A DNA stretch of 64,000 nucleotides from contig NC_043024.1 in the NCBI RefSeq assembly GCF_006345805.1, forward strand, positions 14,508,001-14,572,000. The letters run 5' to 3'. Shown here in pieces: positions 333-63,543 of the stretch (within the stretch, counting starts at the first letter, position 1; each line of letters opens with the position of its first letter). Below the pieces are notes generated by a model. The model was not told the origin of the DNA. It saw only the letters and a list, made by a program, of their open reading frames with translations, and did not search any database. The translations under genes were made by a program, and so were the position numbers. The DNA is from Octopus sinensis (taxonomy: Eukaryota).

Positions 333-2513
333 GTAAGTAAATTTAACACTACAATTATTATAACAAAGGTCTTCACTGTTTATATTTATCTATTCTATCA
401 TATATAGTGAAGGCGCATGGCCCAGTGGTTAGAGCATCGAACTTACAATCGTGAGGTTGTGAGCTCGAATCCCCGACCGGGCTGCGTGTTGTGTTCTTGA
501 GCAAGACACTTTATTTCATGTTGCTCCAGTTCACTTAGCTGTAGAAATGAGTTGCGATGTCACAGGTGCCAAGCTGTATCAGTCTTTGCCTTTCTGTTGG
601 TGTGGAGAGGGGAGGCGGCTATGCATGAGCGACTGCTGGTCTTCCCTAAACAACCTTGCCAGGGCTTGTGCCTCGGAGGGTAACTTTCTAGGTATAACCC
701 CATGGTTTGTGTCATGACCGAAGGGGGTCTCAGAATTCTGTCATAGAATTTTAACTATTTTTTTAAGAAGATTTGTAGCTGTGTGGTAAAAAGATTGCTT
801 CTCAACCATGTGGTTCCAGGTTTAATAATAATCAACTTTATGGGACAAATATATAAAAGTTTAACAATAAAAAAAACTTATTATTTAGTTTGATTTTACA
901 TTAAACGCTCTTAAAGTTTTACTTTACAAATCAGGAAAAAAATCTCTCAATAAATATAAATTCGATTTTTTAAAAACTTTCATTCATCATTATCATCATC
1001 ATCATCGTTTAATGTCCGCTTTCCATGCTAGCATGCGTTGGACAATTTGATTGAGGACTGGCGAACCAGATGGCTGCACCAGGCTCCAATCTGATCTGGC
1101 AGAGTTCCTACAGCTGCATGCCCTTCCTAATGCCAACCACTCTGAGAGTGTAGTGGGCGATTTGACATGCCACCGGCACGAGGGCCAGTCAATCAGTACT
1201 GGCAACAGCCACGCTCACATGGTACTTTTTCTGTGCCACTTGCACAGGAGGCAGTCCAGTGGCACGGACAACAACTTCCTTTGAATGTTTTTTCACATGC
1301 CACCAGGACAAGTGCTAGAAAGGCAACACAGGTGACAATCACACTCGATTGGTGCTTTGTCCATGCTACCGGCACGGAGGCCAGCTTGTTGCTCTGGCAA
1401 CAATCTCACTCATATGGTACTCTTAGCGCTCCACTAGCACGGATGCCAGTCATCGAATTTGATTTCGATTTTGATATTATTTATTAATCAAATCTTCTCC
1501 AAGATTAAAGTATATACATGCCATATATTGAAGAACCCTATTAGCTATTAACGATACAAAAATGATATATAATACATATGAATTGCCATTTTCTTGCAGG
1601 ACCAGCTGTTACTCCATCAGGCAAGTACAATTCTACTGTTTGTTTAGTTATTAAAATGAAAGTATTTGAGGTGGTGAGCTGGCAGAATCGTTAGCATGCT
1701 GGACAAAATGCTTAGTGGTATTTCATCTATCGTTCTGTTCTGAGTTCAAATTCCGCTAAGGTCAACTTTACTTTTCATTCTTTTGGGGTCGATGAAATAA
1801 GTACCAGTTGAATACTGCATTGACACCCACATTTCAGTACCATGTAGCATACATGTTTATACAATAAGATTGATAGCATATGATAGAGGAATTCAAATCT
1901 AACATCTGTAATGTACATGACATTGACAATCAAATAAATACTATGCTTGCTCATATTTCTTTGCTTTTGTTTTTCTTTTTCATTCAACATATTATATAAT
2001 CTCATTCATTTCTTTCATTTGAACAGTTTTTTATTTTTTTGTCATTTTCTTCATTTCTGTTTTTTGTACATTTGTTTTACATGTGACTTTCATTTGTACA
2101 TTATACATGGATGTTTTTATAATTTTCTAACATAGTATATTATGTGATACATGATAATATAAGTAATGTACATCTGATATGGTACTACAGTGAGTAACTG
2201 GTATTTATCATCAGTACACATCTCACACTGGTATGTAAGTTTTAATATCAATATATGTAAGTCTAATGATGAAAACATTATCAGTCACACATACATAGTT
2301 TATATGTTTACTTTATAAACACCCAGTGTCATGTAAAGAGTTTCCTCAGGACACTATCCTGCAGCAAGTTGGTATATAAACAAACAACATACACTGTGTA
2401 TGTGCATCTGATGATATATATATGTGGATATATACTGCAAACACTCTATTCATTTTAAAAAAAAACAGTAGTACTTGGGAAATATTGGTGAATGTATGTA
2501 TGTATGTAACTAT

Positions 2514-2609: not shown

Positions 2610-5600
2610 AGCTGTCTGTCTGTCTGTTTGTCTCCCAAATGTTTTGAAAATATTTCTGAAATGCAGCCAAATATTCGATCTTTTTTTTTTTAAATTATGA
2701 ACAAATCTTTTTTGAAATTTTTTTCATACATTGAATTTTATGAACAGAAAAGTCATATTCAACTTTATGGGATTTATATATTTAGAAGTTTAGCAGTAAA
2801 AAAAAATGTTTAATATTTAGTTTGATTTTACATTAAACAATCCTAAAGTTTTGCTTTACACATCTGGAAAAACTCTCTCAATATAAATTCGTTTTCATTT
2901 TTAAAACTTCATTATTTATTATCAAATGTTCTCTAACATGCTATATATTGAAGAACCCTATAGCTATTAACGATACCAAAATGATATATAATACAAAATA
3001 AATTGCCATTTTCTTGCAGGGCCAGCTGTTACTCCATCAGGTAAGTACAATTCTACTGTTTGTTTAGTTATTAAAATGAAAGTGTTTAAGGTGGTGAGCT
3101 GGCAGAATCGTTAGCATGCAGGATAAAATGCTTAGTGGTATTTCATCAATTGCTACGTTCTGAGTTCAAATTCCGCTAAGGTCAACTTTACCTTTCATCC
3201 TTTTAGGGTCGATAAAATAAGTACCAGTTGAATACTGCATTGAGGCCCTCATTTCACTACCATGTAGCATACATGTTTATACAATAAGATGTTAGTTTCA
3301 CAAGACTTCTCTCTTGCATCTTACAACTCTTTTTTCCTATGGCTAATTTTTCTCTCAGAACATTTGCACTTTGTCATACATGCACACTAACGTTGCACAT
3401 ACATTAGAGTTTGTGCCAATGCTATCAAACCATCCAATGTGCTCTGCATTCAGGCCCACATCTCACTACCATGTAGCATACATATTTATACCCTAGGATG
3501 ATACTTTCAGCGAGAGGAAATGAAAGCAAAACTGTAATGTAATAGATAACATGGACAATCAAGAAATATATGCATTGTTCATAAGATGACCATCGGTTAG
3601 TTTGTCTTTTCTCACTCAACATATTACATAGAATGACAAACATCTTTTAAACTTTGAATATGTCAGCAGTTAATCCATTCATAATACATTTACTGTTACA
3701 CTTAAACAGAGATATTTTTAGTTTAAGCATTCAATGTAATTTTCCACATTTACTGAAATATTTTCATTAGATGGTAATTTGTTTTTCTAACACAGCATAA
3801 ATGTTATGTGATTGGAGGTAAATGGATATTTATGCTTTGATTTCAGAGGTAACTGGTACTATACGCCCTCACACTGGTATGTAAGTTTTAATATCAATAT
3901 ACGAAATGTCTTTATATTCTAAATATATATATATATACTGATTATAACTACAATGGACCATATTCTTCAACATGGAAGTAGTGGCAAAATTTTGGTTTCT
4001 ACTTTGGTTGTTTTCATTTTGTTTATGTTGAATTCATCTGTGAAGACAAAATAATCATCATATCAGGATCCTTTGAATTCTCTTGGCAGGATTTTTGCCA
4101 ATTTATGTCTACAGCAGTTGACAAATAATAACAAAAAAGGAAGTGAAGTAGAATCAGTACACGTGCTTTTATATTGTGAAACAACGCTCAAGAGATCCAA
4201 CACCATCTTGTTACACATTCTTTTCCACATCATGAATCTTGTGAAACTTAAATAGCATAAAAAATATCAGATGGTTTTGAAGAAAAATTAGAAGAATTTT
4301 AGCATTTCATTTTTATAGGGTGGAAAGATATTGTATGTAAAATGAAAAAGCACCAATTTTCAGCAGCACATATTCTAATTCTAAAAAATAATTTTTATAA
4401 TTCTCTTTCAGTTACATATTCTACAATCTCACCCATGCTAATTTATACCTTCTCTTATTGTCAGTCTGTCTGTCTCTCTCCCAAACAATTTGAAAATAGT
4501 TCTGAAATGCAGCCAAATATTCAATCGTATTTTTTTCTGAATTATAAACAAAACTTTTGTGAAATTTTTTTCATAGACTGAATTTTATGAACAGATGTCA
4601 TATTCAATTTTATGGGACATATATATTTAAAAGTTTAACAATAAAAAAATGTTTAATATTTAGTTTGATTTTACATTAAGCAATCCTAACGTTTTGCTTT
4701 TCAAATCTGGAAAAAGTCTGTCAATAAATATAAATTCGTTTTCATTTTTAAACTTTCATTATTTATTAATCAAATATTCTCCAACACCTTATACATTGAA
4801 GAACCATATTAGCTGTTAACGATACAGAAATGATATATAATTCAAAATAAATTGCCATTTTTTTTGCAGGACCAATTGTAACTAGCATAGCTGTTACTCC
4901 ATCAGGTAAGGACAATTCTACTGTTTGTTTAGTTATTAAAATGAAAGTATTTAGGGTGTTGAGCTGGCAGAATCGTTAGCATGCTGGGTGAAATGCTTAC
5001 CGGTATTTCGTCTGCCATTACGTTCTGAGTTCAAATTCCGCCGAGGTTGACTTTGCCTTTCATTCTTTTGGGGTTGATAAAATAAGTACTAGTTACGCAC
5101 TGGGGTCGATATACGACTTATTCCATTTGTCGGTGTTTGTCCTCTCTGTATTTAGCCACTTGTGGATAGTAAATAAATAGGTATTTCATCTATCTCTACG
5201 TTCTGAGTTCAAATTCCGCTAAGGTCAACTTTACCTTTCATCCTTTTGCGGTCGATAAAATAAGTACCAGTTGAATGTTGGATTGAGTCCCACATTTCAC
5301 TACCATGTAGCATACATGTTTATGCAATAAGCTGATGGTTTCACATGACCAAACTATCACATCACATCACATTACCAAACTATCAAAGTCTTCTCTCTTG
5401 CATCTTATAACTCCTTCCTCCTATGGCTAATTTTTCTCTCAGAACATTTGCACTTTGTCATACATGCACACTAACGTTGCACATACATAAGAGCCTGTTC
5501 CAATCCTATTAAACCATCCAATGTGCTCTGCATTCAGGCCCACATCTCACTACCATGTAGCATACATGTTTATACACTAGGATGATACTTTCAGATAAAA

Positions 5601-8600
5601 GAATTAAAAGCAAAACTGTAACGTAATAGATAACACGGACAATCAAGAAATATATGCATTGCTCATAAGATGACCATCGGTCAGTTTGTCTTTTCTCACT
5701 CGTCAGCAGTTAATTCATTCATAATACATTTACTGTTACATTTAAACAGAGATGTTTTTAGTTTAAGCATTCAATGTAATTTTCCACATTTACTGAAATA
5801 TTTTCTTTTAGATGGTAATTTGTTTTTCTGACACGACATAAATGTTATGTGATTGGAAGTAAATGGCTATTTATGCTTTGATTACAGAGGTAACTGGTAC
5901 TATACACCCTCACACTGGTATGTAAGTTTTAATATCAATATATGAAATGTCTTTATATTCTAAATATATATATTATATACTGATTATAACTACAATGGAA
6001 AACATTCTACAACATTTTTAAACCTTCATTATAAACCTTCATAATATTCTCCAACATGCTATATATTGAAGAACCCTTTTAGCTATTAATGAGACAAAAA
6101 TGATATATAATACATATAAATTGCCATTTTCTTGCAGGACCAGCTGTTACTCCATCAGGTAAGGACAATTCTACTGTTTGTTTCATTATTAAAATGAAAG
6201 TATTTAAGGTGATGAGCTGGTAGAATCATTAGAACACCGGACGATATGCTTGGCGGTATTTAATCTATCACTATGTACAGAGTTCAAATTCTGCTAAGGT
6301 CAACTTTACATTTCATCATTTCGGTGTCGATAAAATATGTACAAGTTGAAAAAATGTGTCGATGTGATCAACTCATCCCCTCCCACCAAAAATTACTTCT
6401 CTTGTGGCAAAAGTTGAAACCATTATTATGAAAGTATTACTGAATGTAATTCGTTATTCTATGACAGAATGTTTAGCTTAATCACAAATGCTTTGAAATA
6501 ATTATTGGTTGCTTATGAAGCTATTTCTCATCAGAAACCTTTAACCCTGCTGAGTTCACTTGTCCTGTAATGCTTATAAATAGAGTTGAAATTAAACTGA
6601 GTGACTGGTTTATTGTGTAAAAATAACAAAAGGACAGTAAACATAATTCTATATGAAATACTGTATGTATAATTAATTTGAGAGAGATGAGAGCAAAAGT
6701 CACTCAGTAATGTGTGGCTGCCACGCGGATAACATGGATTCCTGAACGAAGTGTAGGCATTGCTCAAAAGCTATCAGTTTGTCTTTTTTCACCCAACTTA
6801 TTAGCTATAATGATTAATATCATTTAAATTTGATTATGCTAGGAGTTAATTCAACATCATCATTATTTAATGTCCATGTTCCATGCTGGCATCAGTTGGA
6901 TAGGTTGACAGCATTCAATGAGTTCAAAAACTGTACTGTGATCCAGTGTCTACTTTGGTCTGGTTCCTACAGCTGCATTTCCTTTCCAAATACCAACCAT
7001 CTTGCAGTGTGTACTCAATGCTTTTTGTACTCTCGTGCTATATTGAGGTCATCATTCAGCTCAGAAGACTACAAAACACTGGTGGAGGGAGTCAGCTTTA
7101 TGTTGGTAACAAGTTGAGTGAGAAAAGACAACAAACAGTCCATGAGTAATACATATATTTCTTGCAGAAAATGTTCTGTATTGCAAGACTAGCAGCATAG
7201 CCCGGCGTTGCCTGGGTATGTAAGAGCCCCTAGTAGGCAACGACTAATCCCAATCTAGTCCTTTCCCTCTAGGGAATGAAGGCGCATGTGTAGGTTGCAA
7301 TGTCTTCTCTTCACTCGAATACTTCTGTGTATACGATGTTCCTAGCTGTCCCTTTGGGCGATAAAAAGGTCGAGTTGTGTCCCCAAGACAGAAAATGTGT
7401 TGCATATAAAAAGCTTAGATTCTCGACCCCATGTCGAATTTATCAATTTTTTTCAGAACTGGGGAAACTTTTAAAATTATAGCTGCGTTAGTTTTGAATT
7501 ATGACATTGGGCTATGTGTGTGTCAAGTTTCATCAGAATCGGTTGAAAGCCGTGGTCAGGGTGAGGGTACAACCTGACAGACACACAGACAGACAAACTG
7601 CCATTTATATATAGAGAGATTTTATGTGGAGCAGATGAGATGATATGGAGGCAGCTAGCAACTATAAAATAGTAGGGTAGAGCTAAAGAGTGCTCCCCAA
7701 TGAGTTACGAGGTGGGAATGGACACGGGGATGCAGGAGGAAGTGGGTGAGATGAAAGCAGGAGGCTGATAATAATACTGATGTTCATGGGAAAACAAGAG
7801 AGATGACAAGATGAGGAAGACTGTAAGAATGGGAGAAGAGGTAGGAATTGAGTATTTAGTTTGCTTCTCTTGGGGTGAGAGGAATCAATGTAAAATATGG
7901 GTGGAGAGCACAATGTACCCAGCACTTCCAGAACTCAGTTTTGCTGATATGGACGGGTCTTCTTGAGAACCTCCTGTTGTCACACATCCTTGTGCTTTTT
8001 CATTTCCTCTGTGAGGTTTAACATCTTGATATCAACCCTCACCATGTCATCTCACACTTTACTGGTTCTCCTTCTTCAACAAGTTTCATCCATTTTGATG
8101 ATTTAAAATTCTTTATACAGCTGTCCACACACATCACATGACCAAACTATCACATGACCAAGCTATCAAAGTCTTCTCTCTTGCATCTTACAACTCCTTT
8201 ATTCTACGGATAATTTTTCTCTCAAACATTTGCACTTTGTCATACATGCACACTAATTTTGCACATACATTAGAGCTTATTCCAATCCTATCAAACCACC
8301 CCACATGCTCTGCATTCTGGCCCACACCTCACTACCATGTAGCATACATGTTTTTACATTTGGAGGATAGTTTCAGATAGAGGAATTGAAAGCAAAACTG
8401 TAATGTAATAGATAACATGGACAATCAAGAAATATATGCATTGCTCATAAGATGACCATCGGTCAGTTTGTCTTTTCTCACTTAACATTTTATGTATAAT
8501 GACTAACATCATTTAAACTTTAAATATGTCAGCAGATAATCCATTCATAATCCATTTACTGTTACATTTAAACAGAGATATTTTTATTTTAAGCATTCAA

Positions 8601-38391: not shown

Positions 38392-39024
38392 ATATATATA
38401 TATGTAGGATAAATTTCTTAATGTAAGGGTAAATATGTAAATACCTTGCAATACTGCTGTGATAGTTATTAACTGGTAATGGAACAGTAAATGTGTGTTT
38501 TTTATATATACCTTGGACCTTGCCAAATCATTGTTTTTTTTTCTAGAGTTTCACATCTAGAACTTATATACATACATCCAGGCATGTCAGTCCTCATATA
38601 TATATATATATATATATATGTGCACATGTGTGTGTGTTTAATAACATATATAACGCAAAACACACACACACTCACAGACACATACATGCTCATACACTCA
38701 CAGATATACACTCATATACAAAAATGTGGAATAAAATGTTACTGACATACACTCACATACATATACTAAGATAGTCACACAGAGACATATTCACGCATGT
38801 CAGTCATAGCATATGTATATGTATGTGTAGATATGTATATGTTTAATAACATACCTAATGCGGAAAGACACACATACTATGAGACAGATACACAGTCAAT
38901 ACAAAATGTGACGTTGTCGTGGTATAAAATGTCCTGTTGGCAATAGAAAGATTATATCTATGAAATTTTTATACTGTTTTAATCGAAATGAAAATATAAT
39001 TTCATATTGACACTGGCCAGCCAT

Positions 39025-39059
<35 letters not shown>

Positions 39060-42000: not shown

Positions 42001-42528
42001 CACTCACAGACAGATATACAGTCATATACAAAATGTGATGTCGTCGTCGTTGTGGTATAAAATGTCCTGTTGACAATAGAAAGATTATTCCTATGAAATC
42101 TTGTATTGTTCTAATCGAAATGAAAATAAAATTTCGTAATAACACTGACCAGCCCTCACATACATATAGTGTGTTTAATAATGTACCTAACGCAGAAAGA
42201 CACACATACACACTGTGAGACATATATACACTCATGCACATACATTCACAGACAGATACATAGTCATATACAAAATGTGATGTCGTCGTCGTCAGTTGTC
42301 ACATATGTATGTGTAGATGTGCATGTGTGTTTAATAATGTACCGTTATATATGTATGTGTAGGAGTGTGTGTATGTATGTATGTATGTATGTATGTATGT
42401 ATGTGAACATGTACATATTTAAGTGTGTAGACGTGTCTGCATGTGTATATGTACATGTAAATGTATGTTTATATACTGATATGTTTGTCTGTTCAAGTTG
42501 TATACATAACTCTTACTCCATCGAAGGT

Positions 42529-42591
<63 letters not shown>

Positions 42592-55715: not shown

Positions 55716-57167
55716 AGTTTGTATATATACCCAATAAGGTTCGAAAATCGATTAAAGTTGTGCATCATTTTTTTGGTATAGGCGCAGGAGTGGCTGTGTG
55801 GTAAGTAGCTTGCTTACAAACCACATGGTTCCAGGTTCAGTCCCACTGCATGGCACCTTGGGCAAGTGTCTTCTACTATAGCCTCGGGCCACCCAAAGCC
55901 TTGTGAGTGGATTTGGTAGATGGATACTGAAAGAAACCCATTGTATATATGTATACATCTATATGTGTATGTGTGTGTGTGTGTGTGTATAAATGTAGCA
56001 GTAATTTTATTCAGCTGAATACACATCATTGATTGGTTGAAATTACTGAAATAGGACTACTTTAACGTGAAATTACTTCGTAAATATAAGTTTTTCTCAA
56101 AAATGCTAAGAATAAAAGATGTTTTATATGATACATTCTACCAGTGTCCGAAGTTTGAAAGTGCTTAGTTACAAAAAATTATTTTTTAAATCTGTAGCTC
56201 CAAAGGTAAAGATCCCATTTTTACTATACACAGTTCTGATGGTTTGATCTGCAAATCTTGAAAAGAATCTCTGAATAAATATGATATTTTGATCACATTT
56301 ATTTAATCAAATCATACATAGAACACATTGAAGAATTGTATTAGTTATTAACAATACAAAAACATCATGTAATGCAAACAAATTGCCATTTTCTTGTAGG
56401 ACCAAGTGTATCTGGCATATCTCTTACTTCACCAGGTAAGTGCAGTTCTGCTGTATGTTTTGTGACTATCATGAAAGTATTACTGAATGTAATTTGTTAT
56501 TCTGTGATAGAATTTTTAGCTCAAGGTGGCGAGCAGGCAGAAACGTTAGCATGCTGGGCAAAATGCTTACGGGTAGTTCATCTGTCTTTACGTTCTGTGT
56601 TCAAATTCTGTGTAGGAGTGGCTGTGTGGTAAGTAGCTTGTTTACCAACCACATGGTTCCGGGTTCAGTCCCACTGCATGGCACCTTGGGCAAGTGTCTT
56701 CTATTATAGCCTCAGGCCGACTATTCAGTTTAATTTAAGAGACCTGCTGTTTTTGTCCTGTTTTTACATGTGAAGGTTTCTAAATAAAGATAAATACCTT
56801 ATAAAGTCATGTTTTTATTTTTGCTTTTGTTTTGGGGGTTTCACTTTAGTGACACCAATTACACATGGTACCAGAAATTTGCTTGGAGTTGCCAATATGG
56901 AAAAAGTGTTTTTTAAGTTTTTGAAAATTTTAAATAAAAAGGCATGTTTTTTAAAACTGTCTGTCACAGAGATGTGAAAAATGGCTTCTACCTGTTAATT
57001 TCAAATTTAACTTACCAAAGCTGAGGGTCTTTCAGCACTCCCCAAGTCTCTTAATGCACCCCCACTAGCACCCCTTTGCTCCAAAACACCCCCATCGAGC
57101 TCCAAATGATCCCTTTTGAGAACCTTTGTTTTAGACCACACTGACATATATTCTCTCTGTCTCTCTG

Positions 57168-57199: not shown

Positions 57200-60100
57200 A
57201 TATTCATTTGTAAGTGATTGATAAAAACATATGATACTTTCCCATTAATAAGTTTCTGGCACATATATTTAGATATTTATCATCAAAACAATTATTATTT
57301 CTTTATTGCCCACAAGGAGCTAAGCACAGAGGGTACAAACAACGACAGACAAAGGGATTAAGTCAATTACATCGACCCCAGTGCGTAACTGGTACTTAAT
57401 TTATCAACCCCGAAAGGATGAAAGGCAAAGTCGACTTCGGCAGAATTTGAACTCAGGGCGTAACGGCAGACGAAATACCTATTTCTTTATTACCGACAAG
57501 GGGCTAAACACAGAGAGGACAACCAAGGACAGACATAGGTATTAAGTCGATTACATCGACCCCAGTGCGTAACTAGTACTTAATTTATCGACCCCGAAAG
57601 GATGAAAGGCAAAGTCGACTTTGGCAGAATTTGAACTCAGAACGTAATGGCAGACAAAATACCGCTAAGCATTTCGCCCGGCGTGCTAACGTTTCTGCCA
57701 GCTCGCCACCTTAGCCACTGTTTTAACCATATTGTGCCTAGATGTACTACACTTTTTTTTAGGGATAACACCCTTTTCTTCAACATAATACGCAGCATTC
57801 ACCTCTGTCATCAAAGCAATTATTTCTGCTTAGTTCATCTTTATGATGCACAGTTCTGATGGTTTAGCCTGCAAATCTTGAGAAAAATCTCTAAATAAAC
57901 ATGGCATATTCTTTTTGCAAACAACTGTTATTTATTTGATCAAATCCTGCAGGTAACATTTAAAGAATTGTATTAGTTATTAACAATCCAAAAATAACAT
58001 ATAATGCAAACAAATTGCTATTTTCTTGCAGGACCAAGTGTATCTGGCATATCTCTCACTCCATCAGGTAAGTACACTTCTACTGTATGTTTAGTGATTA
58101 TTATAAAAGTGTTACTGAATGCAATTTGTGATTCTGTGATAGAATTTTTAGCTTATCATAAAGCGGTTTGAAATAATTATCAATAGATGTCTTGCAAACA
58201 ACTTGCACATGCAAGTGCTACCAGCCAAGAACTCTGCATACCGGAAGCCAGGTAGTGTATGGGGTCATCAGGAGAGAATGCTCACCATTTTGGGGCCTAC
58301 ATCTCGACGGCATCAATGTGCACCAGCCTCCTCACTGATATGAGGCTCTGCTTGCTAGATCAACTGGTTATCAAATAAAGCTCAATATTCTTCTGCCCAT
58401 TGCTCATCGTCTCTTTTTAACCAAATCCAGTGGCTAGCCTTCTCCACCGTAGTTTGGATATTGGTCACGGTGGGATTGACTTTACAATGAGTTAGGCCTA
58501 ACGATAACAACAGTCGTCTCACACTGTGTCCAACGAACCCTCTACATCCAACTTCGAAACATCAGAAACATTCAGCCTGGCTGGGTTCACTTGTGGTAAA
58601 ATGCTTACATATGGAGTTGGAACTGTTGTGGTGATAGACAGGAACATTGCAAAGCCAGCAGATCATACAATATTCATTTCTTTCAAGCTTTCACATGTCC
58701 TCTGCAATCACAACCCATGTTTCGTGACAGAGGAAATGTGAAAGCGTGACAGAAATGAATCTAGAATGCTCCACAAGATGAGCAATGTCAATTTGCATGT
58801 ATGACTGAATCTAAGCATCTTGAAAGAAAAACCAGGCATAATAAACATCAGATGTGGTGCACATGAGAGGCATCTGTGCTGGTATGGTCATGTATGTATG
58901 TATGTATACATTTCTGTACGCCACAAGGCTTTGGCTGGCCCAAGGCTGTAGTAAAAGACACTTGCCCAACGTAACCTGTCACACAGTAGGACTCAGTGCG
59001 TGAACCATGTGGTTGCTTAAACATTATAATTCTAAGAAAACTTTAAATATTCATTTCAAATATTGGCTTTATATATAACGGGAAGGTTTATGAAAATAAA
59101 CAAAAGACGAAGGCAGGTGGAGTAGAAGCAAACTAATGTATTAGTATGGCGCTCAGGAATAGAAATGGAACAAGTTTTTACATTTTGAGCGTACGCTCTT
59201 CGACAGAAAGATACACAGAAAAAACAAGGAGAGAAAAAATGCGTGTAGGAGCTAACGATCTATCATGGCGTCCTGACCAAGTGGTTGAGCACTCCACAGA
59301 CACATGTACCCTTATATATATATATGTGTGGAGGCGCAATGGACCAGTGGTTAGGGCAGTGGACTTGTGGTCGTAGGATCGCGGTTTCAATTCCCAGACC
59401 GGGCATTGTGAGTGTTTATTAAGCAAAAACACCTAAAGCTGCACGAGGCTCCAGCTGGGGATGGTGGTGAACCCTGCTGTACTCTTTCACCACAACTTTC
59501 TCTCACTCTTTCTTCCTGTTTCTGTTGTACCTGTATTTCAAAGGGCCAGCCTTATCACACTCTGTGTTATGCCGAATCTCCCCAAGAACTACGTTAAGGG
59601 TACATGTGTCTGTGGAGTGCTCAGCCACTTGCACATTAATAAATGAGTTGCGACGTCACAGGTGCCAAGCTGTATCAGCCTATTCCTTTCCCTTTGATAA
59701 CACTGCTTGCGTAGAGAGGGGAGGCTGGTATGCATGGGCGACTGCTGGTCTTCCATAAACAACCTTGCCCAGACTTATGCCTCAGAGGGTATCTTTCAAA
59801 TATTCATGACCGAATGGTGTCACATATATATCATCAAAATAAGCAACAAGAATAACATCGGTAATTTGGTATGATCGTTTCGCACTACATCATTTTATTA
59901 AATGTTGTAAGTATTACAACAGTTTTAAAATGCTGAGCACTCATCAACCATTAATAGAGGTTTTCCATTAATACATAATTTTCATATCAATTGATAACAT
60001 TATAGAGAAGGTAGATATATAGACAAAGATGTGGATTTAAATTTTAAGAACATTTAAGGTAGTGGAGTTTATCAACTGACTGGATAATATTCAGTTGCTA

Positions 60101-62282
60101 TGAACTGCTAGAAGATTCTGAGAAGAATGGACAATTGAAAGGAGACAAAAAAGATTTTCTATTTATAGAAATAGGGGTGAAATAGATGTCAAAGTTCCAT
60201 ATAAAAAATTTAGGTACATGTCACATTATTTTAATCAAAGTTTTTCAAAGAATGCATCTGTACATAATTAGTTAGTGAAAATTTATGTAATTTATTAACT
60301 GTGTAAAATTGTATAATACAAATAAATTATTTCTCTTTTGCAGCTGCAAGCACAGGTACTCCAACAGTCTCTTCAGCAGGTTTGTATATTTGATACTAAA
60401 CCATATGTTTAGTCAATATAATGAAAGTACTTACTAGGTGTCTAAGTTTACCTTGTCTGTCACAGAATATAACTTATCAGTTTTGAATTAGTTTTAGTTA
60501 GGTTCATACAATCTAAAAGAAACAAAAAGAAAATTCAAAAGTAACATTTGAACTTTACTTGTTGGTGTTGGCTGTAAATGTTCACCTCTTGTAGAACCAA
60601 GACTGAGGAAATTTTAGTTGGTGTTACTGAAAACTATATTCTCCAAAACGACCAGATCCAAGAAACAACTGACACTACCTTAGTCTCGTTGGCTCTAGTA
60701 GAACATGTGACAAATGGCTGAACACTGAAATATCACCAACTGAATTAAAGATTACTTATATAAATATGAAGAGTCAACTTAGAGCTGAACAGCAGGTCGG
60801 GATCTTAGATAATCTGAATTCAATATTCAATAGTGCCGGTGGCACGTAAAAAGCACCATCCGATCGTGGCCTTTTGCCAGCCTCGTCTGGCACCTGTGCA
60901 GGTGGCACATAAAAAGCACCCATTACACTCTCGGAGTGGTTGGCGTTAGGAAGGGCATCTAGCTGTAGAAACGCTGCCAGATGTACTACACTTTTTTTTA
61001 GGGATAACACCCTTTTCTTCAAAATAATACGCAGCATTCACCTCTGTCATCAAAGCAATTATTTCTGCTTAGTTCATCTTTATGATGCACAGTTCTGATG
61101 GTTTAGCCTGCAAATCTTGAGAAAAATCTCTAAATAAACATGGCATATTCTTTTTGCAAACAACTGTTATTTATTTGATCAAATCCTGCAGGTAACATTT
61201 AAAGAATTGTATTAGTTATTAACAATCCAAAAATAACATATAATGCAAACAAATTGCTATTTTCTTGCAGGACCAAGTGTATCTGGCATATCTCTCACTC
61301 CATCAGGTAAGTACACTTCTACTGTATGTTTAGTGATTATTATAAAGTGTTACTGAATGCAATTTGTGATTCTGTGATAGAATTTATAGCTTATCATAAA
61401 GCGGTTTGAAATAATTATCAATAGATGTCTTGCAAACAACTTGCACATGCAAGTGCTACCAGCCAAGAACTCTGCATACTGGAAGCCAGGTAGTGTATGG
61501 GGTCATCAGGAGAGAATGCTCACCGTTTCGAGGCCTACCTCTCGACAGCATCAATGTGCACCAGCCACCTCACTGATATGAGGCTCTGCTTGCTAGATCA
61601 GCTGTTTATCAAATAAAGCTCAATATTCTTCTAGCCATCACTCATCGTCTCTTTTTAACCAAATTCAGTGGCTAGCCTTCTCCACTGTAGTTTGGATATT
61701 GGTCACGGTGGGATTGACTTTACGATGAGTTAGGCCTAACGATAACAACAGTCGTCTCACACTGTGTCCAACGAACCCTCTACATCCAACTTCGAAACAT
61801 CAGAACATTCAGCCTGGCTGGGTTCACTTGTGGTAAAATGCTACATATGGAGTTGGAACTGTTGTGGTGATAGACAGGAACATTGCAAAGCCAGCAGATC
61901 ATACAATATTCATTTCTTTCAAGCTTTCACATGTCCTCTGCAATCACAACCCATGTTTCACGACAGAGGAAATGTGAAAGCGTGAAGAAATGAATCTAGA
62001 TGTTCCACAAGATGAGCAATGTCAATTTGCATGTATGACTGAATCTAAGCATCTTGAGAGAAAAACCAGGCATAATAAACATCAGATGTGGTGCACATGA
62101 GAGGCATCTGTGCTGGTATGGTCATGTATGTATGTATGCATTTCTGTACGCCACAAGGCTTTGGCTGGCCCAAGGCTGTAGTAAAAGACACTTGCCCAAC
62201 GTAACCTGTCACACAGTAGGACTCAGTGTGTGAACCATGTGGTTGCTTAAACATTATAATTCTAAGAAAACTTTAAATATTC

Positions 62283-62319
<37 letters not shown>

Positions 62320-63543
62320 CGGGAAGGTTTATGAAAATAAACAAAAGACGAAGGCAGGTGGAGTAGAAGCAAACAATGTATTAGTATGGCGCTCAGGAAT
62401 AGAAATAGAACAAGTTTTTACATTTTGAGCGTACGCTCTTCGACAGAAAGATACACAGAAAAAACAAGGAGAGAAAAAAATGCGTGTAGGAGCTAACGAT
62501 CTATCATGGCGTCCTGACCAAGTGGTTGAGCACTCCACAGACCCATGTACCCTTATATATATATATGTGGAGGCGCAATCGACCAGTGGTTAGGGCAGTG
62601 GACTTGTGGTCGTAGGATCGCGGTTTCAATTCCCAGACCGGGCATTGTGAGTGTTTATTAAGTGAAAACACCTAAAGCTGCACGAGGCTCTTTCTTCCTG
62701 TTTCTGTTGTACCTGTATTTCAAACGGCCAGCCTTGTCACACTCTGTGTCATGCTGAATCTCCCTGAGAAGTACGTTAAGAGTACACATGTCTGTGGAGT
62801 ACTTAGCCACTTGCACATTAATAAATGAGTTGCGACGTCACAGGTGCCAAGCTCTATCAGCCTATTCCTTTCCTTCGATAACACTGTTGCGTAGAGAGGG
62901 GAGGCTGGTATGCATGGGCGACTGCTGGTCTTCCATAAACAACCTTGCCCAGACTTATGCCTCAGAGGGTATCTTTCAAATATTCATGACCGAATGGGGT
63001 CACATATATATCATCAAAATAAGCAACAAGAATAACTTCAGTAATTTGGTATGATCGTTTCACACTACATCATTTTATTAAATGTTGTAAGTATTACAAC
63101 AGTTTTAAAATGCTGAGCACTCATCAACCATTAATGGAGGTTTTCCATTAATACATAATTTTCATATCAAGTGATAACATTATAGAGAAGGTAGATATAT
63201 AGACAAAGATGTGGATTTAAATTTTAAGAACAAGGTAACTGACTGAATAATATTCAGTTGCTATGAACTGCTAGAAGATTCTGAGAAGAATGGGCAATTG
63301 AAAGGAGACAAAAAAGATTTTCTATTTATAGAAATAGGGGTGAAATAGATGTCAAAGTTCCATATAAAAAAATTTAGGTACATGTCACATTATTTTAATC
63401 AAAGTTTTTCAAAGAATGCATCTGTACATAATTAGTTAGTGAAAATTTATGTAATTTATTAACTGTGTAAAATTGTATAATACAAATAAATTATTTCTCT
63501 TTTGCAGCTGCAAGCACAGGTACTCCAACAGTCTCTTCAGCAG
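297..63543 (+). CDS. Internal portion of a multi-exon mucin-like (Pro/Thr/Ser-rich) protein gene built from 41 intact symmetric phase-1 micro-exons (21 x 36 nt, 16 x 30 nt, 4 x 21 nt)
   Basis: Recurrent polypyrimidine-(C/T)AG acceptors and GT(GC) donors bound 21/30/36-nt segments. All end in G, are stop-free in phase 1 and translate to related PTS-rich peptides. No start or terminal exon was identified. Confidence 0.85.
407..731 (+). mobile_element. tRNA-derived SINE family B
   Basis: gaaggcgcatggcccagtggttagagc (A box) ... gctcgaatcccc (B box) ... cttgagcaagacacttt central domain. Confidence 0.8.
991..1470 (-). mobile_element. RTE-tail short retroposon (SINE or LINE 3' UTR fragment)
   Basis: catcatcatcgtttaatgtccgctttccatgctagc, same as the LINE tail at 33712. 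Confidence 0.75.
1600..1620 (+). CDS. Micro-exon 21 nt, GPAVTPS (GC donor)
   Basis: ttttcttgcag / CAG|gcaagt. Confidence 0.65.
2512..2606. repeat. (TATC)n microsatellite
   Basis: Direct inspection; shorter allelic forms in paralogous units (e.g. 23625-23693). Confidence 0.95.
3020..3040 (+). CDS. Micro-exon 21 nt, GPAVTPS
   Basis: ttttcttgcag / gtaagt. Confidence 0.8.
3847..3876 (+). CDS. Micro-exon 30 nt, [10 protein letters not shown]
   Basis: tttgatttcag / gtatgt. Confidence 0.8.
4870..4905 (+). CDS. Micro-exon 36 nt, [12 protein letters not shown]
   Basis: ttttttgcag / gtaagg. Confidence 0.8.
5888..5917 (+). CDS. Micro-exon 30 nt, [10 protein letters not shown]
   Basis: tttgattacag / gtatgt. 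Confidence 0.8.
6138..6158 (+). CDS. Micro-exon 21 nt, GPAVTPS
   Basis: ttttcttgcag / gtaagg. Confidence 0.8.
7189..7619 (-). mobile_element. Short non-autonomous Helitron-like element
   Basis: Minus strand A|TCtctatatataa...tgtctgtctgtg 5' end; cccaggcaacgccggg hairpin then CTAG|T. Confidence 0.7.
7930..8095 (-). mobile_element. Degenerate RTE LINE 3' fragment
   Basis: Minus-strand [31 protein letters not shown] resembles [32 protein letters not shown] of the 34-kb LINE. Confidence 0.45.
8713..8742 (+). CDS. Micro-exon 30 nt, [10 protein letters not shown]
   Basis: tttgatttcag / gtacgt. Confidence 0.8.
9185..9220 (+). CDS. Micro-exon 36 nt, [12 protein letters not shown]
   Basis: ttctgttgcag / gtaagt. 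Confidence 0.8.
10054..10083 (+). CDS. Micro-exon 30 nt, [10 protein letters not shown]
   Basis: tttgattacag / gtatgt. Confidence 0.8.
11404..11439 (+). CDS. Micro-exon 36 nt, [12 protein letters not shown]
   Basis: ttctgttgcag / gtaagt. Confidence 0.8.
12276..12305 (+). CDS. Micro-exon 30 nt, [10 protein letters not shown]
   Basis: tttgattacag / gtacgt. Confidence 0.8.
13635..13670 (+). CDS. Micro-exon 36 nt, [12 protein letters not shown]
   Basis: ttctgttgcag / gtaagt. Confidence 0.8.
14502..14531 (+). CDS. Micro-exon 30 nt, [10 protein letters not shown]
   Basis: tttgattacag / gtacgt. Confidence 0.8.
15346..15381 (+). CDS. Micro-exon 36 nt, [12 protein letters not shown]
   Basis: ttttcttgcag / gtaagt. 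Confidence 0.8.
15808..15843 (+). CDS. Micro-exon 36 nt, [12 protein letters not shown]
   Basis: ttttcttgtag / gtaagt. Confidence 0.8.
16385..16420 (+). CDS. Micro-exon 36 nt, [12 protein letters not shown]
   Basis: ttttgttgcag / gtaagt. Confidence 0.8.
17258..17287 (+). CDS. Micro-exon 30 nt, [10 protein letters not shown]
   Basis: tttgatttcag / gtacgt. Confidence 0.8.
18557..18592 (+). CDS. Micro-exon 36 nt, [12 protein letters not shown]
   Basis: ttttcttgcag / gtaagt. Confidence 0.8.
19018..19053 (+). CDS. Micro-exon 36 nt, [12 protein letters not shown]
   Basis: ttttcttgtag / gtaagt. Confidence 0.8.
19594..19629 (+). CDS. Micro-exon 36 nt, [12 protein letters not shown]
   Basis: ttttgttgcag / gtaagt. 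Confidence 0.8.
20463..20492 (+). CDS. Micro-exon 30 nt, [10 protein letters not shown]
   Basis: tttgatttcag / gtacgt. Confidence 0.8.
21667..21702 (+). CDS. Micro-exon 36 nt, [12 protein letters not shown]
   Basis: ttttcttgcag / gtcagt. Confidence 0.75.
22227..23347 (+). mobile_element. 5'-truncated copy of the 1.6-kb Helitron
   Basis: Homologous to 30420-31573; ends gtcataatgCTAG|T. Confidence 0.7.
23886..23921 (+). CDS. Micro-exon 36 nt, [12 protein letters not shown]
   Basis: ttttcttgcag / gtaagt. Confidence 0.8.
24526..24554 (+). pseudogene. Frameshifted copy of the 30-nt EVTGT exon (29 nt); pseudo-exon or consensus error
   Basis: aggtactggt instead of aggtaactggt; splice sites intact; flanks have other 1-nt deletions. 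Confidence 0.6.
24766..24788 (+). pseudogene. Frameshifted copy of the 21-nt GPAVTPS exon (23 nt); pseudo-exon or consensus error
   Basis: gttactctccatcag carries an extra TC; splice sites intact. Confidence 0.6.
25668..25697 (+). CDS. Micro-exon 30 nt, [10 protein letters not shown]
   Basis: tttgattacag / gtatgt; GGT>TGT gives Cys. Confidence 0.75.
25840..27347 (+). mobile_element. 5'-truncated copy of the 1.6-kb Helitron
   Basis: Homologous to 30030-31573; ends acgacgggtcataacgCTAG|T. Confidence 0.75.
27864..27899 (+). CDS. Micro-exon 36 nt, [12 protein letters not shown]
   Basis: ttttcttgcag / gtaagt. Confidence 0.8.
28498..28527 (+). CDS. Micro-exon 30 nt, [10 protein letters not shown]
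   Basis: tttgatttcag / gtatgt. Confidence 0.8.
28749..28769 (+). CDS. Micro-exon 21 nt, GPAVTPS (GC donor)
   Basis: ttttcttgcag / CAG|gcaagt. Confidence 0.65.
29648..29677 (+). CDS. Micro-exon 30 nt, [10 protein letters not shown]
   Basis: tttgattacag / gtatgt. Confidence 0.8.
29987..31573 (+). mobile_element. Non-autonomous Helitron-like element (1,587 bp), complete copy
   Basis: A|TC tatatata 5' end, tgtctgtctgtgtg subterminal microsatellite, GC-rich subterminal stem-like motif, CTAG|T 3' end. Confidence 0.75.
32114..32149 (+). CDS. Micro-exon 36 nt, [12 protein letters not shown]
   Basis: ttttcttgcag / gtaagt. Confidence 0.8.
32999..33028 (+). CDS. Micro-exon 30 nt, [10 protein letters not shown]
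   Basis: tttgatttcag / gtacgt. Confidence 0.8.
33568..33599 (+). pseudogene. Donor-less exon copy [10 protein letters not shown] followed directly by TAA (pseudo-exon or alternative terminal/poison exon)
   Basis: tttgattacag acceptor; homologous to exon 48382-48411 but lacks G|gtatgg; reads ...AAA ACT TAA. Confidence 0.6.
33712..35618 (-). mobile_element. 5'-truncated RTE-clade LINE, inactivated (RT C-terminal half, 3' UTR, (GAT)n tail)
   Basis: Minus-strand EKAFDRVPR...[26 protein letters not shown] (TGG>TAG stop), [17 protein letters not shown]; (cat)n at 33712-33735. Confidence 0.92.
35639..35770. repeat. 132-bp spacer-less palindrome (66-bp arms, one mismatch)
   Basis: Centre tttc|gaaa between 35704 and 35705; arms checked base by base. 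Confidence 0.95.
35919..36014. repeat. (TA)n microsatellite
   Basis: Direct inspection. Confidence 0.95.
36016..36400 (+). mobile_element. SINE family A, full length
   Basis: ggagtggctgtgtggtaag ... internal (TA)/(TG) tract ... aatgactgaaacaagtaaaagag. Confidence 0.85.
36693..37224 (+). mobile_element. Short non-autonomous Helitron-like element
   Basis: (TA)n-aaaactg start; ends cccgagcaacaccgggcgatactgCTAG|T; contains an internal duplicated segment. Confidence 0.65.
37436..37700 (+). mobile_element. 3' fragment of an RTE/BovB-like LINE ORF
   Basis: Translates [52 protein letters not shown], typical of the RTE ORF C-terminus. Confidence 0.75.
37966..38290 (+). mobile_element. SINE family B-related
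   Basis: tggcttagtggttaggg...gagttcgcttccc...ccttgagcaagacacttt. Confidence 0.75.
38297..38403. repeat. (TA)n microsatellite
   Basis: Direct inspection. Confidence 0.95.
39060..40570. repeat. Tandem repeat, about 372-bp unit x4 plus a partial copy
   Basis: ggctgatcgaattggccgccgattt starts at about 39060, 39431, 39804, 40175 and 40548. Confidence 0.95.
40673..41440. repeat. C-rich minisatellite, about 150-bp unit x5 with alternating variants
   Basis: ccaccattataggtgtctactctttgaacccccc recurs five times. Confidence 0.95.
41443..41685 (+). mobile_element. RTE-tail short retroposon
   Basis: taaaaagcacc...ggcgttaggaagggcatccagc...ttaaacgatgatgat. Confidence 0.8.
43213..43628 (-). mobile_element. 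SINE family A, full length
   Basis: Reverse-complement match to 36016-36400. Confidence 0.85.
43990..44740 (+). mobile_element. Degenerate mariner transposase remnant interrupted by a SINE
   Basis: After SINE removal, ATG at 44176 reads [31 protein letters not shown]...[10 protein letters not shown]...EPRCGRP (HTH); LHHDNAPTH near 44706. Confidence 0.75.
44202..44424 (-). mobile_element. tRNA-derived SINE (same family as the array-embedded SINE) with a 15-bp TSD
   Basis: GATTGAGCAAATATA at 44187-44201 and 44425-44439. Confidence 0.9.
44783..45175 (+). mobile_element. SINE family A, full length
   Basis: Match to 36016-36400. Confidence 0.85.
45223..45258 (+). CDS. Micro-exon 36 nt, [12 protein letters not shown]
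   Basis: tctcttttgtag / gtttgt; flanks homologous to those of exon 60344-60379. Confidence 0.7.
45740..45967 (+). mobile_element. SINE family A, 3' half
   Basis: gtcgcttgacaacc...aaacaagtaaaagag. Confidence 0.8.
46426..46455 (+). CDS. Micro-exon 30 nt, [10 protein letters not shown]
   Basis: tttttggttacag / gtatga; downstream intron homologous to EVTGT-type introns (tttaatatcaa-atatgaaat). Confidence 0.75.
46506..47071 (-). mobile_element. Internally deleted mariner (566 bp) with TIRs and TA target duplication
   Basis: Left TA|tcgggttgtctggaaagtttgtgccgattt, right aaatcggcatgaactttccggacaacccaa|TA; minus-strand [28 protein letters not shown] catalytic motif. Confidence 0.9.
47430..47606 (+). 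mobile_element. SINE fragment, same family
   Basis: gggcgaaatgcttagc...gggttcaaattccgccgag...aagtaccagttacgcactgg. Confidence 0.75.
47608..47800. mobile_element. Right-end fragment of the same Tc2/pogo-like MITE
   Basis: Homologous to 49890-50076, ends tactcgaggagttacgg|TA. Confidence 0.75.
48022..48324 (+). mobile_element. RTE-tail short retroposon
   Basis: Same 3' end with (GAT)n tail. Confidence 0.8.
48382..48411 (+). CDS. Micro-exon 30 nt, [10 protein letters not shown]
   Basis: ttctttgattgcag / gtatgg; same conserved downstream intron. Confidence 0.75.
48569..48797. mobile_element. piggyBac-like MITE, degenerate copy
   Basis: TTAA|cacttttgttatc ... ggtatcaaaaggt|TTAA; homologous to 48829-49049. 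Confidence 0.65.
48829..49049. mobile_element. piggyBac-like MITE (221 bp)
   Basis: TTAA|cccttttgttac ... gtaacgaaaggg|TTAA. Confidence 0.8.
49185..49552 (+). mobile_element. SINE family A, degenerate
   Basis: ggctgtgtggtaagaagcttgc...gagttcagtccc...gtggatttgg. Confidence 0.7.
49565..50076. mobile_element. Non-autonomous Tc1/mariner-superfamily element (Tc2/pogo-like MITE, 512 bp)
   Basis: TA|ccgtaaatcctcgagtata ... tatactcgaggatttacgg|TA terminal inverted repeats. Confidence 0.8.
50245..50558 (+). mobile_element. RTE-tail short retroposon
   Basis: Same 3' end with (GAT)n tail. Confidence 0.8.
50712..51071 (+). mobile_element. RTE-tail short retroposon
   Basis: Same 3' end with (GAT)n tail. 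Confidence 0.8.
51139..51168 (+). CDS. Micro-exon 30 nt, [10 protein letters not shown]
   Basis: gctcttttacag / gtatgt; paralogous to exon 53794-53823 including flanks. Confidence 0.7.
51376..51760 (-). mobile_element. SINE family B-related with a 13-bp TSD
   Basis: TATTACCATATCT at 51363-51375 and 51761-51773. Confidence 0.85.
52040..52455 (-). mobile_element. SINE family A, full length
   Basis: Reverse-complement match. Confidence 0.85.
52725..53142 (+). mobile_element. SINE family A, full length
   Basis: Match to 36016-36400. Confidence 0.85.
53794..53823 (+). CDS. Micro-exon 30 nt, [10 protein letters not shown]
   Basis: cactttttttacag / gtatat. Confidence 0.7.
54011..54596 (-). mobile_element. 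Short non-autonomous Helitron-like element
   Basis: Minus strand A|TCtatatatataaaactc 5' end; gagccgggcaatactgCTAG|T 3' end. Confidence 0.65.
54862..55728. repeat. Complex (TA)n/(TATG)n/(TG)n microsatellite, about 870 bp
   Basis: Direct inspection. Confidence 0.95.
55778..55990 (+). mobile_element. SINE family A, 5' half
   Basis: ggagtggctgtgtggtaag...aaagaaaccc. Confidence 0.8.
56400..56435 (+). CDS. Micro-exon 36 nt, [12 protein letters not shown]
   Basis: ttttcttgtag / gtaagt. Confidence 0.8.
56522..56722 (+). mobile_element. Nested SINE fragments (array-type SINE head fused to family A head)
   Basis: ggtggcgagcaggcagaaacgttag...gttcaaattctg then ggagtggctgtgtggtaag. Confidence 0.7.
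57292..57711 (-). mobile_element. Tandem/partially duplicated copy of the same SINE family
   Basis: Two successive ...aggatgaaaggcaaagtcgac...gaactcag blocks. Confidence 0.8.
58032..58067 (+). CDS. Micro-exon 36 nt, [12 protein letters not shown]
   Basis: ttttcttgcag / gtaagt. Confidence 0.8.
59328..59822 (+). mobile_element. SINE family B-related composite
   Basis: gtggaggcgcaatggaccagtggttaggg...ggtttcaattccc; duplicated at 62567. Confidence 0.75.
60344..60379 (+). CDS. Micro-exon 36 nt, [12 protein letters not shown]
   Basis: tctcttttgcag / gtttgt. Confidence 0.75.
60832..60983 (+). mobile_element. RTE-tail fragment truncated at the duplication junction
   Basis: gtgccggtggcacgtaaaaagcacc...acgctgccaga then joins tgtactacac. 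Confidence 0.75.
61271..61306 (+). CDS. Micro-exon 36 nt, [12 protein letters not shown]
   Basis: ttttcttgcag / gtaagt. Confidence 0.8.
62567..63001 (+). mobile_element. SINE family B-related composite (duplicate, with internal deletion)
   Basis: Copy of 59328-59822 lacking about 59 bp after gcacgaggctc. Confidence 0.75.
63508..63543 (+). CDS. Micro-exon 36 nt, [12 protein letters not shown]
   Basis: tctcttttgcag / gtttgt. Confidence 0.75.

What the first reader, a model, noticed from the sequence alone, without database searches (positions are those of the whole stretch)
1600..63543. Every exon is a frame-neutral cassette ending in G: a built-in combinatorial splicing and copy-number system
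Seen: all intact exons are multiples of 3, phase 1-1, and end in G, so the junction codon is always G+NN (Gly, Glu, Ala or Val) whichever exon is upstream. No skipping pattern can shift frame or create a stop. Inference: the gene can vary mucin length and glycosite pattern by alternative splicing (tissue or stage isoforms) and by unequal crossing-over between individuals.
Basis: partly seen in the sequence, partly recalled or inferred. Interest (0 to 1): 0.75.

Follow-up and report, generated by a model that had tools for sequence, protein, structure and literature searches.

The report
Octopus mucin-like micro-exon cassette arrays
The window lies inside a very large octopus gene whose Ser/Thr/Pro-rich (mucin-like) protein seems to be encoded by dozens of tiny 21-36-base exons copied in tandem with their introns, all in the same reading phase; adding, losing or skipping a copy therefore cannot break the frame, but no data here show that the animal uses this.

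Summary
On the + strand the window carries 43 candidate micro-exons with canonical splice sites. 41 are multiples of 3 (36, 30 or 21 nt) and 43 of 43 end in G. Junction codons are Gly, Glu, Ala or Val. Only the phase 1-1 frame is open in every copy. Two adjacent copies are frame-broken (29 and 23 nt). All 13 C-type exons (one of them a broken copy) have a rival donor 4 nt downstream that would give 34 nt.

The exons sit in exon-intron cassettes repeated in tandem (2.2, 3.2, 4.0 and 3.25 kb units, 95.5-98.6% alike). The cassettes belong to one + strand locus of at least 184 kb and descend largely from one ancestral cassette. Frame-neutrality and the terminal G are therefore inherited and follow the splice-site consensus. 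They need not be a designed system.

Alternative splicing and copy-number variation between individuals remain untested. Four putative RNA contig sets covered only the repeats in a 6-kb test stretch.

The design is known from tropoelastin, schistosome micro-exon genes and DMBT1. This scan has noted similar micro-exon arrays elsewhere in this genome, and a giant mucin gene lies just downstream. I rate it a new variant of a known kind, of moderate interest.

The parts
297..332 (+). H exon, 36 nt, (V)[11 protein letters not shown]; unique copy
   Evidence: ttttcag|..|gtaagt; flanks related to G/K/P cassettes
1600..1620 (+). A exon, 21 nt, GPAVTPS; GC donor (gcaagt)
2191..2230 (+). degenerate C-type copy, 40 nt, not a multiple of 3 (pseudo-exon)
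3020..3040 (+). A exon, 21 nt
3847..3876 (+). C exon, 30 nt, [10 protein letters not shown]; rival donor at +4
4870..4905 (+). B exon, 36 nt, [12 protein letters not shown]
5888..5917 (+). C exon, 30 nt
6138..6158 (+). A exon, 21 nt
8713..8742 (+). C exon, 30 nt; donor GTACGT with GTAAGA at +4
9185..15345 (+). three tandem units [B C]: two of 2.2 kb and a shorter third of 1.7 kb. B exons at 9185-9220, 11404-11439, 13635-13670; C exons at 10054-10083, 12276-12305, 14502-14531
   Evidence: neighbouring units 98.6% and 96.3% alike; exons
15346..21666 (+). two 3.2-kb units [B B B C]: B exons at 15346-15381, 15808-15843, 16385-16420, 18557-18592, 19018-19053, 19594-19629; C exons at 17258-17287, 20463-20492
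   Evidence: units 97.4% alike; exons
21667..21702 (+). B exon, 36 nt, weak donor GTCAGT; the C exon of this unit is deleted
23886..33028 (+). 4-kb units [B' C A C]: B' exons at 23886-23921, 27864-27899, 32114-32149; C exons at 25668-25697, 28498-28527, 29648-29677, 32999-33028; A exon at 28749-28769 (GC donor)
   Evidence: units 95.6% alike; exons
24526..24554 (+). broken C copy, 29 nt (one A missing)
24766..24788 (+). broken A copy, 23 nt (CT inserted)
33568..33596 (+). dead V-type copy; donor lost
33029..45222 (+). 12.2-kb gap with no exon found, read as an intron full of repeats; reverse-transcriptase fragment on the - strand at 35290-35541
   Evidence: RVT_1, E 2.4e-9
45223..45258 (+). 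K-type exon, 36 nt, [12 protein letters not shown]; donor GTTTGT
46426..46455 (+). E exon (V-type), 30 nt, [10 protein letters not shown]
48382..48411 (+). F exon (V-type), 30 nt, [10 protein letters not shown]
51139..51168 (+). G exon, 30 nt, [10 protein letters not shown]
53794..53823 (+). G exon, 30 nt, [10 protein letters not shown]
56400..56435 (+). D exon (P-type), 36 nt, [12 protein letters not shown]
58032..64000 (+). start of the 3.25-kb [D K] array, six units in all, running on past the window end to about 77 kb in window numbering. D exons at 58032-58067, 61271-61306; K exons at 60344-60379, 63508-63543 ([12 protein letters not shown]; donor GTTTGT). Each unit adds 72 nt = 24 aa
   Evidence: units 97.8-98.5% alike, cassette cores identical

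Best explanation
The window is an internal part of one very large + strand gene. The gene spans at least 184 kb, G000:C28:14467811-14652086, in what is probably Octopus sinensis.

Here its product is a low-complexity polypeptide rich in Ser, Thr, Pro, Val and Gly (mucin-like). It is encoded only by micro-exons of 21-42 nt separated by introns of 0.2-12 kb. About 2% of the DNA is coding.

The exons lie in exon-intron cassettes that were multiplied in tandem, alone or in blocks of 2-4 exons, most likely by unequal crossing-over or replication slippage. Most cassettes go back to one ancestral symmetric cassette.

Only an exon whose length is a multiple of 3 can be multiplied without breaking the frame. 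The donor consensus also puts G at the last exon base. Every descendant is therefore phase 1-1 and ends in G, and every junction codon is GNN.

Shown here: the exon anatomy, the single shared open frame, the coding-type periodicity, the tandem unit structure and the common descent.

Inferred: that the exons are spliced into an mRNA; that the array tolerates gain, loss or skipping of units and so changes length easily in evolution and probably between individuals; and that the two broken copies must be skipped.

Not shown: regulated, combinatorial isoform production.
For: - Splice sites: all 43 exons have an AG acceptor after a pyrimidine tract and a GT or GC donor.
- Strand bias: the scan finds 63 candidates on the + strand and 3 on the - strand.
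- Frame: one frame is open in 44 of 44 unique exon sequences, while the others carry stops.
- Periodicity: 60% of codons are NCN in that frame, against 12-18% in the others.
- Substitutions are uneven across codon positions (39/19/25, p = 0.022), with position 2 the most conserved. This keeps Ser/Thr/Pro/Ala.
- Exon length is conserved in divergent copies, while flanks carry many indels.
- Tandem units are 95.5-98.6% alike.
- P, K, G and H cassettes share their flanks.
- All genomic matches of three cassette types lie on one strand of one locus.
- The 184 kb examined has no N and no long + strand ORF that looks coding.
- Composition: S 20%, T 17%, P 14%.
Against: - No transcript evidence. In four putative RNA contig sets laid on 23800-29799, only SINE and other repeat parts were covered. 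Bins holding the C and A exons had about zero depth, and none of the joints listed lay at a predicted splice site.
- No run is on record as RNA.
- pN/pS is 0.8-2.1, so there is no classical purifying selection on residues.
- Exons are no better conserved than the 20 nt of intron on either side.
- Two broken, two degenerate and one truncated cassette lie in the window, and all 13 C-type exons have a frame-breaking rival donor.
- The gene's ends, signal peptide and any globular domain were not seen.
Confidence: 0.7

Rival explanations
1. The uniform phase and terminal G form a selected, built-in system. Tissue- or stage-regulated cassette splicing picks subsets of exons and so sets mucin length and glycosite pattern.
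For: - Any subset of intact exons is in frame.
- Many exons have weak or unusual donors (GTTTGT, GTACGT, GTCAGT, GCAAGT).
- The 20 nt of intron on either side are more conserved than the exons. From general knowledge, this is typical of regulated cassette exons.
- The two broken exons must be skipped if the gene is live.
- Precedents exist: tropoelastin, schistosome MEGs and frog FIM-C.1.
Against: - No isoform data; the RNA lay was blank at the exons.
- The features follow from descent from one cassette plus the splice consensus, so no selection for combinatorics is needed.
- In DMBT1 the isoforms proved to be mainly copy-number alleles.
Confidence: 0.25
2. Most of the array is dead weight. 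The cassettes are duplicated pseudo-exons inside huge introns of a gene (or of a dead gene), and few or none reach the mRNA.
For: - No RNA coverage.
- pN/pS is about 1 or higher.
- Broken, degenerate and truncated copies exist.
- A frame-breaking rival donor has arisen in the C-type exons.
- The neighbouring note calls the locus unannotated.
Against: - 41 of 43 copies keep splice sites, length and an open frame.
- NCN periodicity is strong.
- Frame-breaking indels in exons are fewer than expected.
- Divergent families (U42, K, G, V, P) all keep the same phase over at least 184 kb.
Confidence: 0.15
3. Assembly artefact. The near-identical units are over-collapsed or over-expanded long-read assembly, and the two broken exons are consensus errors.
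For: - Cassette cores of the six D units and five of the K units are 100% identical.
- One broken exon is a 1-nt loss within AA.
Against: - There is no N in the 184 kb.
- Whole units differ by 1.4-4.5% with many unit-specific indels, so they are distinct copies.
- DNA runs of three organism labels hold a third to half of the sampled words.
Confidence: 0.05

Closest known systems
Tropoelastin (ELN) gene
   Same: [quoted passage not shown] The protein is low-complexity and repetitive, with replicated exon regions. The split codon starts with G.
   Different: - Elastin exons are larger and alternate hydrophobic and Lys cross-linking domains.
- There is no Lys-Ala motif here; the composition is Ser/Thr/Pro.
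- No homology is claimed.
- Here the exons are 21-42 nt and sit in kb-scale tandem cassettes.
Schistosome micro-exon genes (MEGs)
   Same: The coding sequence is built from very short exons, mostly multiples of three (6-81 bp), separated by long introns. The products are secreted, and variation comes from duplication and alternative splicing (PMC10526429).
   Different: - MEGs have 10-20 exons and encode small proteins.
- This locus has about 80 micro-exons over at least 184 kb and probably belongs to a giant protein.
- No sequence relationship was tested.
- Splicing variation is not shown here.
DMBT1 / salivary agglutinin (mucin-hybrid) tandem exon array
   Same: A tandem array of exons with their introns, including short glycosylated Ser/Thr-rich SID segments, acts as a coding copy-number polymorphism of 7-21 SRCR domains (PMC9038570).
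   Different: - DMBT1 units carry a folded SRCR domain.
- Its isoforms are mainly genetic, not splicing.
- Here there are only PTS-type micro-exons and no population data.
Frog integumentary mucins (FIM-C.1 and relatives)
   Same: [quoted passage not shown]
   Different: The frog mucins have TFF or VWD cysteine-rich modules. Their exon anatomy was not checked here, and no such domain was seen in my 184 kb.
Titin PEVK region; spider flagelliform silk gene; LPA kringle IV-2 array (from my own knowledge, not checked here)
   Same: These are long runs of symmetric repeated exons (PEVK), iterated exon-intron units with homogenised introns (Flag silk), and a two-exon coding tandem unit whose copy number varies (LPA).
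   Different: - The protein types differ and the exons are larger.
- None is a mucin-like micro-exon array.

Membership tests
Mucin / mucin-like PTS protein | Long region rich in Pro, Thr and Ser, in tandem repeats | tested here: met
   The 41 exons give 440 aa with S 20%, T 17% and P 14%. Repeats are 22-24 aa, made of exon pairs such as B+C and D+K. V+I is 20%, which is high for a classical mucin.
Mucin / mucin-like PTS protein | Dense O-glycosylation | not testable with these tools
   This needs glycoproteomics or lectin/PAS staining of the product.
Mucin / mucin-like PTS protein | Signal peptide or membrane anchor; for gel-forming mucins VWD/C8/TIL and CK domains | not tested
   - The 184 kb has no long + strand ORF that looks coding.
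- A note on DNA 122 kb downstream reports a 35-kb PTS exon and a discoidin-like domain; I did not verify this.
- PF00754 found nothing on this contig.
Micro-exon gene architecture (MEG-type) | Most coding exons are very short and multiples of 3, with long introns | tested here: met
   41 of 43 exons are 21, 30 or 36 nt; introns are 211 nt to 12.2 kb.
Micro-exon gene architecture (MEG-type) | Protein variants produced by exon skipping | tested here: inconclusive
   One lay of four contig sets on 23800-29799 showed no exon coverage and no splice joints. The tissue is unknown, and pieces of 21-36 nt are hard to lay.
Micro-exon gene architecture (MEG-type) | Sequence homology to schistosome MEG families | not tested
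Tropoelastin-type all-phase-1:1 cassette gene | Every intron is in phase 1, so any exon can be removed in frame | tested here: met
   This holds for the predicted exons. Only the offset-2 frame is open in all families. The P-type exons have stops in both other frames, which fixes the phase for the whole chain.
Tropoelastin-type all-phase-1:1 cassette gene | Alternating hydrophobic (VPG-type) and Lys/Ala cross-linking domains | tested here: not met
   K is 1.1% and there are no KA/KP motifs; Ser/Thr dominate. The locus works like tropoelastin in exon logic but is not a member.
Coding tandem exon-intron array (coding VNTR) | Head-to-tail units of exon(s) plus intron, with high identity and an in-frame increment per unit | tested here: met
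   Units of 2.2, 3.2, 4.0 and 3.25 kb are 95.5-98.6% alike. Increments are 66, 138, 117 and 72 nt per unit.
Coding tandem exon-intron array (coding VNTR) | Unit number differs between individuals | not tested
   Reads were laid on the RNA question, so no second individual was compared.

The most novel reading that the evidence does not exclude
An octopus giant mucin-like gene encodes a large part of its glycosylated region through about 80 or more interchangeable symmetric micro-exons instead of one giant exon. It uses them both as a fast-evolving copy-number array and as a splicing menu. This would be a schistosome-MEG-like 'pick and mix' strategy on the scale of titin PEVK, in a mollusc, giving tissue-specific mucus or surface coats.
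Probability: 0.2. Interest if true: 0.65.

Novelty: new variant of a known kind. Interest (0 to 1): 0.45.

Why it matters
Mucin PTS regions are normally single huge exons whose length varies by in-exon VNTRs. A mucin-like region built from micro-exon cassettes would add splicing as a second way to vary length.

It would also explain why such genes escape annotation. About 2% of the DNA is coding and each exon is 7-12 codons, so gene finders and short-read aligners tend to miss them.

This scan has noted several other micro-exon arrays in the same genome. Together they hint that cassette multiplication of symmetric micro-exons is a general way in which octopus genomes build disordered linkers and stalks.

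Isoform and population data would decide between regulated use and mere tolerance of copy change.

Tried and rejected
- RNA test. The look-up of sequencing runs on 56000-64000 returned only Logan contig sets guessed to be RNA. Read laying of X1, X2, X5 and X7 on 23800-29799 at 90% likeness covered only SINE and repeat stretches, and no joint fell at a predicted splice site. This gives no support.
- PF00754 (discoidin) on the own genome gave no hit on this contig.
- Rfam at gathering threshold found nothing in the window.
- Protein-level searches were not made. Single exons are too short for the tools, and the joined spliced model was deliberately neither built nor searched.
- I considered 26-nt AG..GT segments 27 nt downstream of the P-type donors as extra exons. 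I rejected them: the intron would be 27 nt, they are not a multiple of 3, and they sit at a SINE edge.
- I considered a collagen-like reading and rejected it. Gly is not at every third residue.

Full report
**Where the window lies.** The window is G000:C28:14508001-14572000 of a 2.72-Gb genome in 13,516 contigs. Notes of this scan name it Octopus sinensis, and the assembly figures fit my memory of that assembly; I did not verify this. GC content is 30-45%, and the window is full of microsatellites, SINE-like elements and a reverse-transcriptase fragment on the - strand.

**What is there.** A splice-site scan and alignments of the repeated cassettes find 43 candidate micro-exons on the + strand between 297 and 63543. 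They fall into a few families.

| Family | Length | Encoded peptide | Splice context |
|---|---|---|---|
| P-type: A | 21 nt | GPAVTPS | ttgccattttcttgcag \| … CAG \| gtaagt |
| P-type: B/B' | 36 nt | [12 protein letters not shown] | same |
| P-type: D | 36 nt | [12 protein letters not shown] | same |
| V-type: C | 30 nt | [10 protein letters not shown] | CTG \| gtatg |
| V-type: E, F | 30 nt | (variants) | CTG \| gtatg |
| K | 36 nt | [12 protein letters not shown] | donor GTTTGT |
| G | 30 nt | — | — |
| H (single copy) | 36 nt | — | — |

- 41 exons are multiples of three (21 of 36 nt, 16 of 30 nt, 4 of 21 nt).
- All 43 end in G.
- Junction codons would be GGA (17), GAG (12), GCA (3), GGT (3), GTT (2), GGG (2) and GCT (2).

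**Is it coding, and in which phase?**
- Among 44 unique exon sequences from five families (window plus flanks), the offset-2 frame (phase 1-1) has no stop. The other frames have stops in 29 and 14 of them.
- P-type exons are closed in both other frames. Since symmetric exons keep the phase along a transcript, this fixes phase 1 for the whole chain.
- In that frame 60% of codons have C at position 2 (Ser/Thr/Pro/Ala), against 12% and 18% in the other frames.
- Changes among copies fall unevenly on codon positions (39/19/25, chi-square p = 0.022). Position 2 is the most conserved, which is what one expects if composition rather than exact sequence is kept.
- pN/pS is 0.8-2.1. Exons are no better conserved than the 20 intron bases on either side.
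- Exon length is kept even in the most divergent copies. There are 3 distinct gap patterns in 174 exon columns against 48 in 913 flank columns, and one of the three is an in-frame 15-nt difference (A versus B).
- As a control, the same scan finds 63 candidates on the + strand of the window and 3 on the - strand.
- The pooled product of the window is 440 aa: S 20%, T 17%, P 14%, V 12%, G 10%, I 8%, A 7%.

**Exceptions.**
- Two adjacent copies are broken: 24526-24554 (29 nt) and 24766-24788 (23 nt). Together they add 52 nt, so a live mRNA must skip both.
- Copies at 2191-2230 and 33568-33596 are degenerate, and the C exon of the unit starting at 21667 is deleted.
- All 13 C-type exons read CTG|GTAY|GTAAG (GTATG in the copy at 28498). 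The second donor would make a 34-nt exon and run into a stop in the next B exon.
- The older E/F copies and the downstream V-type copies lack this second donor, so 30 nt is the ancestral form.
- Outside the window, two P-type exons end in A. That is still safe, because only a terminal T could make TAG or TGA with the AG- and GA-starting exons.

**Array structure and extent.**
- The exons sit in tandem exon-intron units:
  - [B C] x3: two units of 2.2 kb and a shorter third of 1.7 kb;
  - [B B B C] x2, 3.2 kb;
  - [B' C A C] x2-3, 4.0 kb;
  - [D K] x6, 3.25 kb, running past the window end.
- Neighbouring units are 95.5-98.6% alike.
- In the flanks I fetched (window numbering -40000 to 144000) the same kind of exon continues. 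Upstream there is a 42-nt family (ASSVSIPYSESTVT) in nine copies and a 33-nt exon. Downstream there are more P, V, K and G copies, some of them dead.
- Genome-wide searches with three cassette types hit only C28:14467811-14652086, always on the + strand.
- The 184 kb has no N and no long + strand ORF that looks coding.
- Aligning one cassette of each family shows that P, K, G and H share their intron flanks. The gene therefore seems to be built largely from one ancestral cassette.
- In the 1.6-33 kb array, a SINE inserted about 50 nt after the P-type donor was copied along with the cassette.

**How it most likely works.**
- A symmetric micro-exon with its introns was multiplied in tandem. Only symmetric exons survive such multiplication, so the uniform phase is a precondition and an inheritance.
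- The terminal G is the consensus last exon base before a donor (general knowledge). Two relatives with A show it is not absolute.
- The array structure supports past unequal exchange.
- Present-day copy-number variation and regulated splicing are inferences.

**RNA test.**
- The one run search returned contig sets only guessed to be RNA.
- Laying four of them on 23800-29799 covered only repeats. Exon-bearing bins had about zero depth and no joints fell at the predicted sites.
- This is no support, and it is only weak evidence against.
Single exons are below the size limits of the protein tools, so no protein-level homology search was made.

**Comparison with what is known.**
- Tropoelastin: all borders are phase 1:1, which allows cassette-like splicing.
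- Schistosome micro-exon genes: short exons that are multiples of three, long introns, and variation by duplication and splicing.
- Frog skin mucin FIM-C.1: polymorphic through alternative splicing.
- DMBT1: a tandem exon array whose isoforms are mainly copy-number alleles rather than splicing.
- Two full-text searches found no paper on cephalopod micro-exon arrays or octopus mucin gene structure.
- This scan has noted comparable micro-exon arrays elsewhere in this genome, and a giant mucin gene 122 kb downstream that may be the same gene. I did not check that link.

**Verdict.** I rate it a new variant of a known kind, with interest 0.45.

Noticed in passing
window 7186-7621: A roughly 435-bp element has at least 40 scored copies (4,991 first-look candidates) at 95-98% identity spread over many contigs. 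It looks like a young, very abundant interspersed repeat inserted in an intron of the array.
   Followed up: partly
window 1660-1800, 3080-3230, 9260-9400 and after every A/B-type exon: A SINE-like element (ggtgagctggcagaatcgttagc...) starts about 50 nt after the P-type donor in the 1.6-33 kb array but is absent from the D-type cassettes. It was inserted once and then amplified together with the cassette. In the lay of putative RNA contigs it carried nearly all of the depth.
   Followed up: partly
window 34198-35541, - strand: Fragments of a non-LTR retrotransposon lie in the 12-kb intron: RVT_1 (E 2.4e-9) and a PHD-like zinc-finger ORF.
   Followed up: yes
window 1051-1487, 33754-34207 (+); 48010-48387, 50637-51017, 60774-61037 (-): A repeated element with internal 63-bp tandem repeats gives a recurring pseudo-ORF (…[18 protein letters not shown]…YVPPA…). 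It has no Pfam match and is probably another SINE- or MITE-like family.
   Followed up: partly
window 39060-40579 and 40668-41442: Two satellite-like tandem repeats lie in the large intron: 372 bp x4.1 (97% alike) and 157/305 bp x5 (92-98% alike), C/T-rich.
   Followed up: no
window 54929-55729: An 800-bp (TATA/TATG)n compound microsatellite with 26-nt periodicity produces long spurious ORFs in all frames.
   Followed up: no
L004-L006 (window numbering -40190 to -23247): An upstream array holds about ten 42-nt exons (ASSVSIPYSESTVT) with weak GTTTGT/GTTCGT donors. They share the phase and terminal G, and the second codon position never varies among copies.
   Followed up: partly
window 1600-1620 and 28749-28769: Two A-type exons have GC-AG introns (CAG|GCAAGT) where their sister copies have GT.
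   Followed up: no
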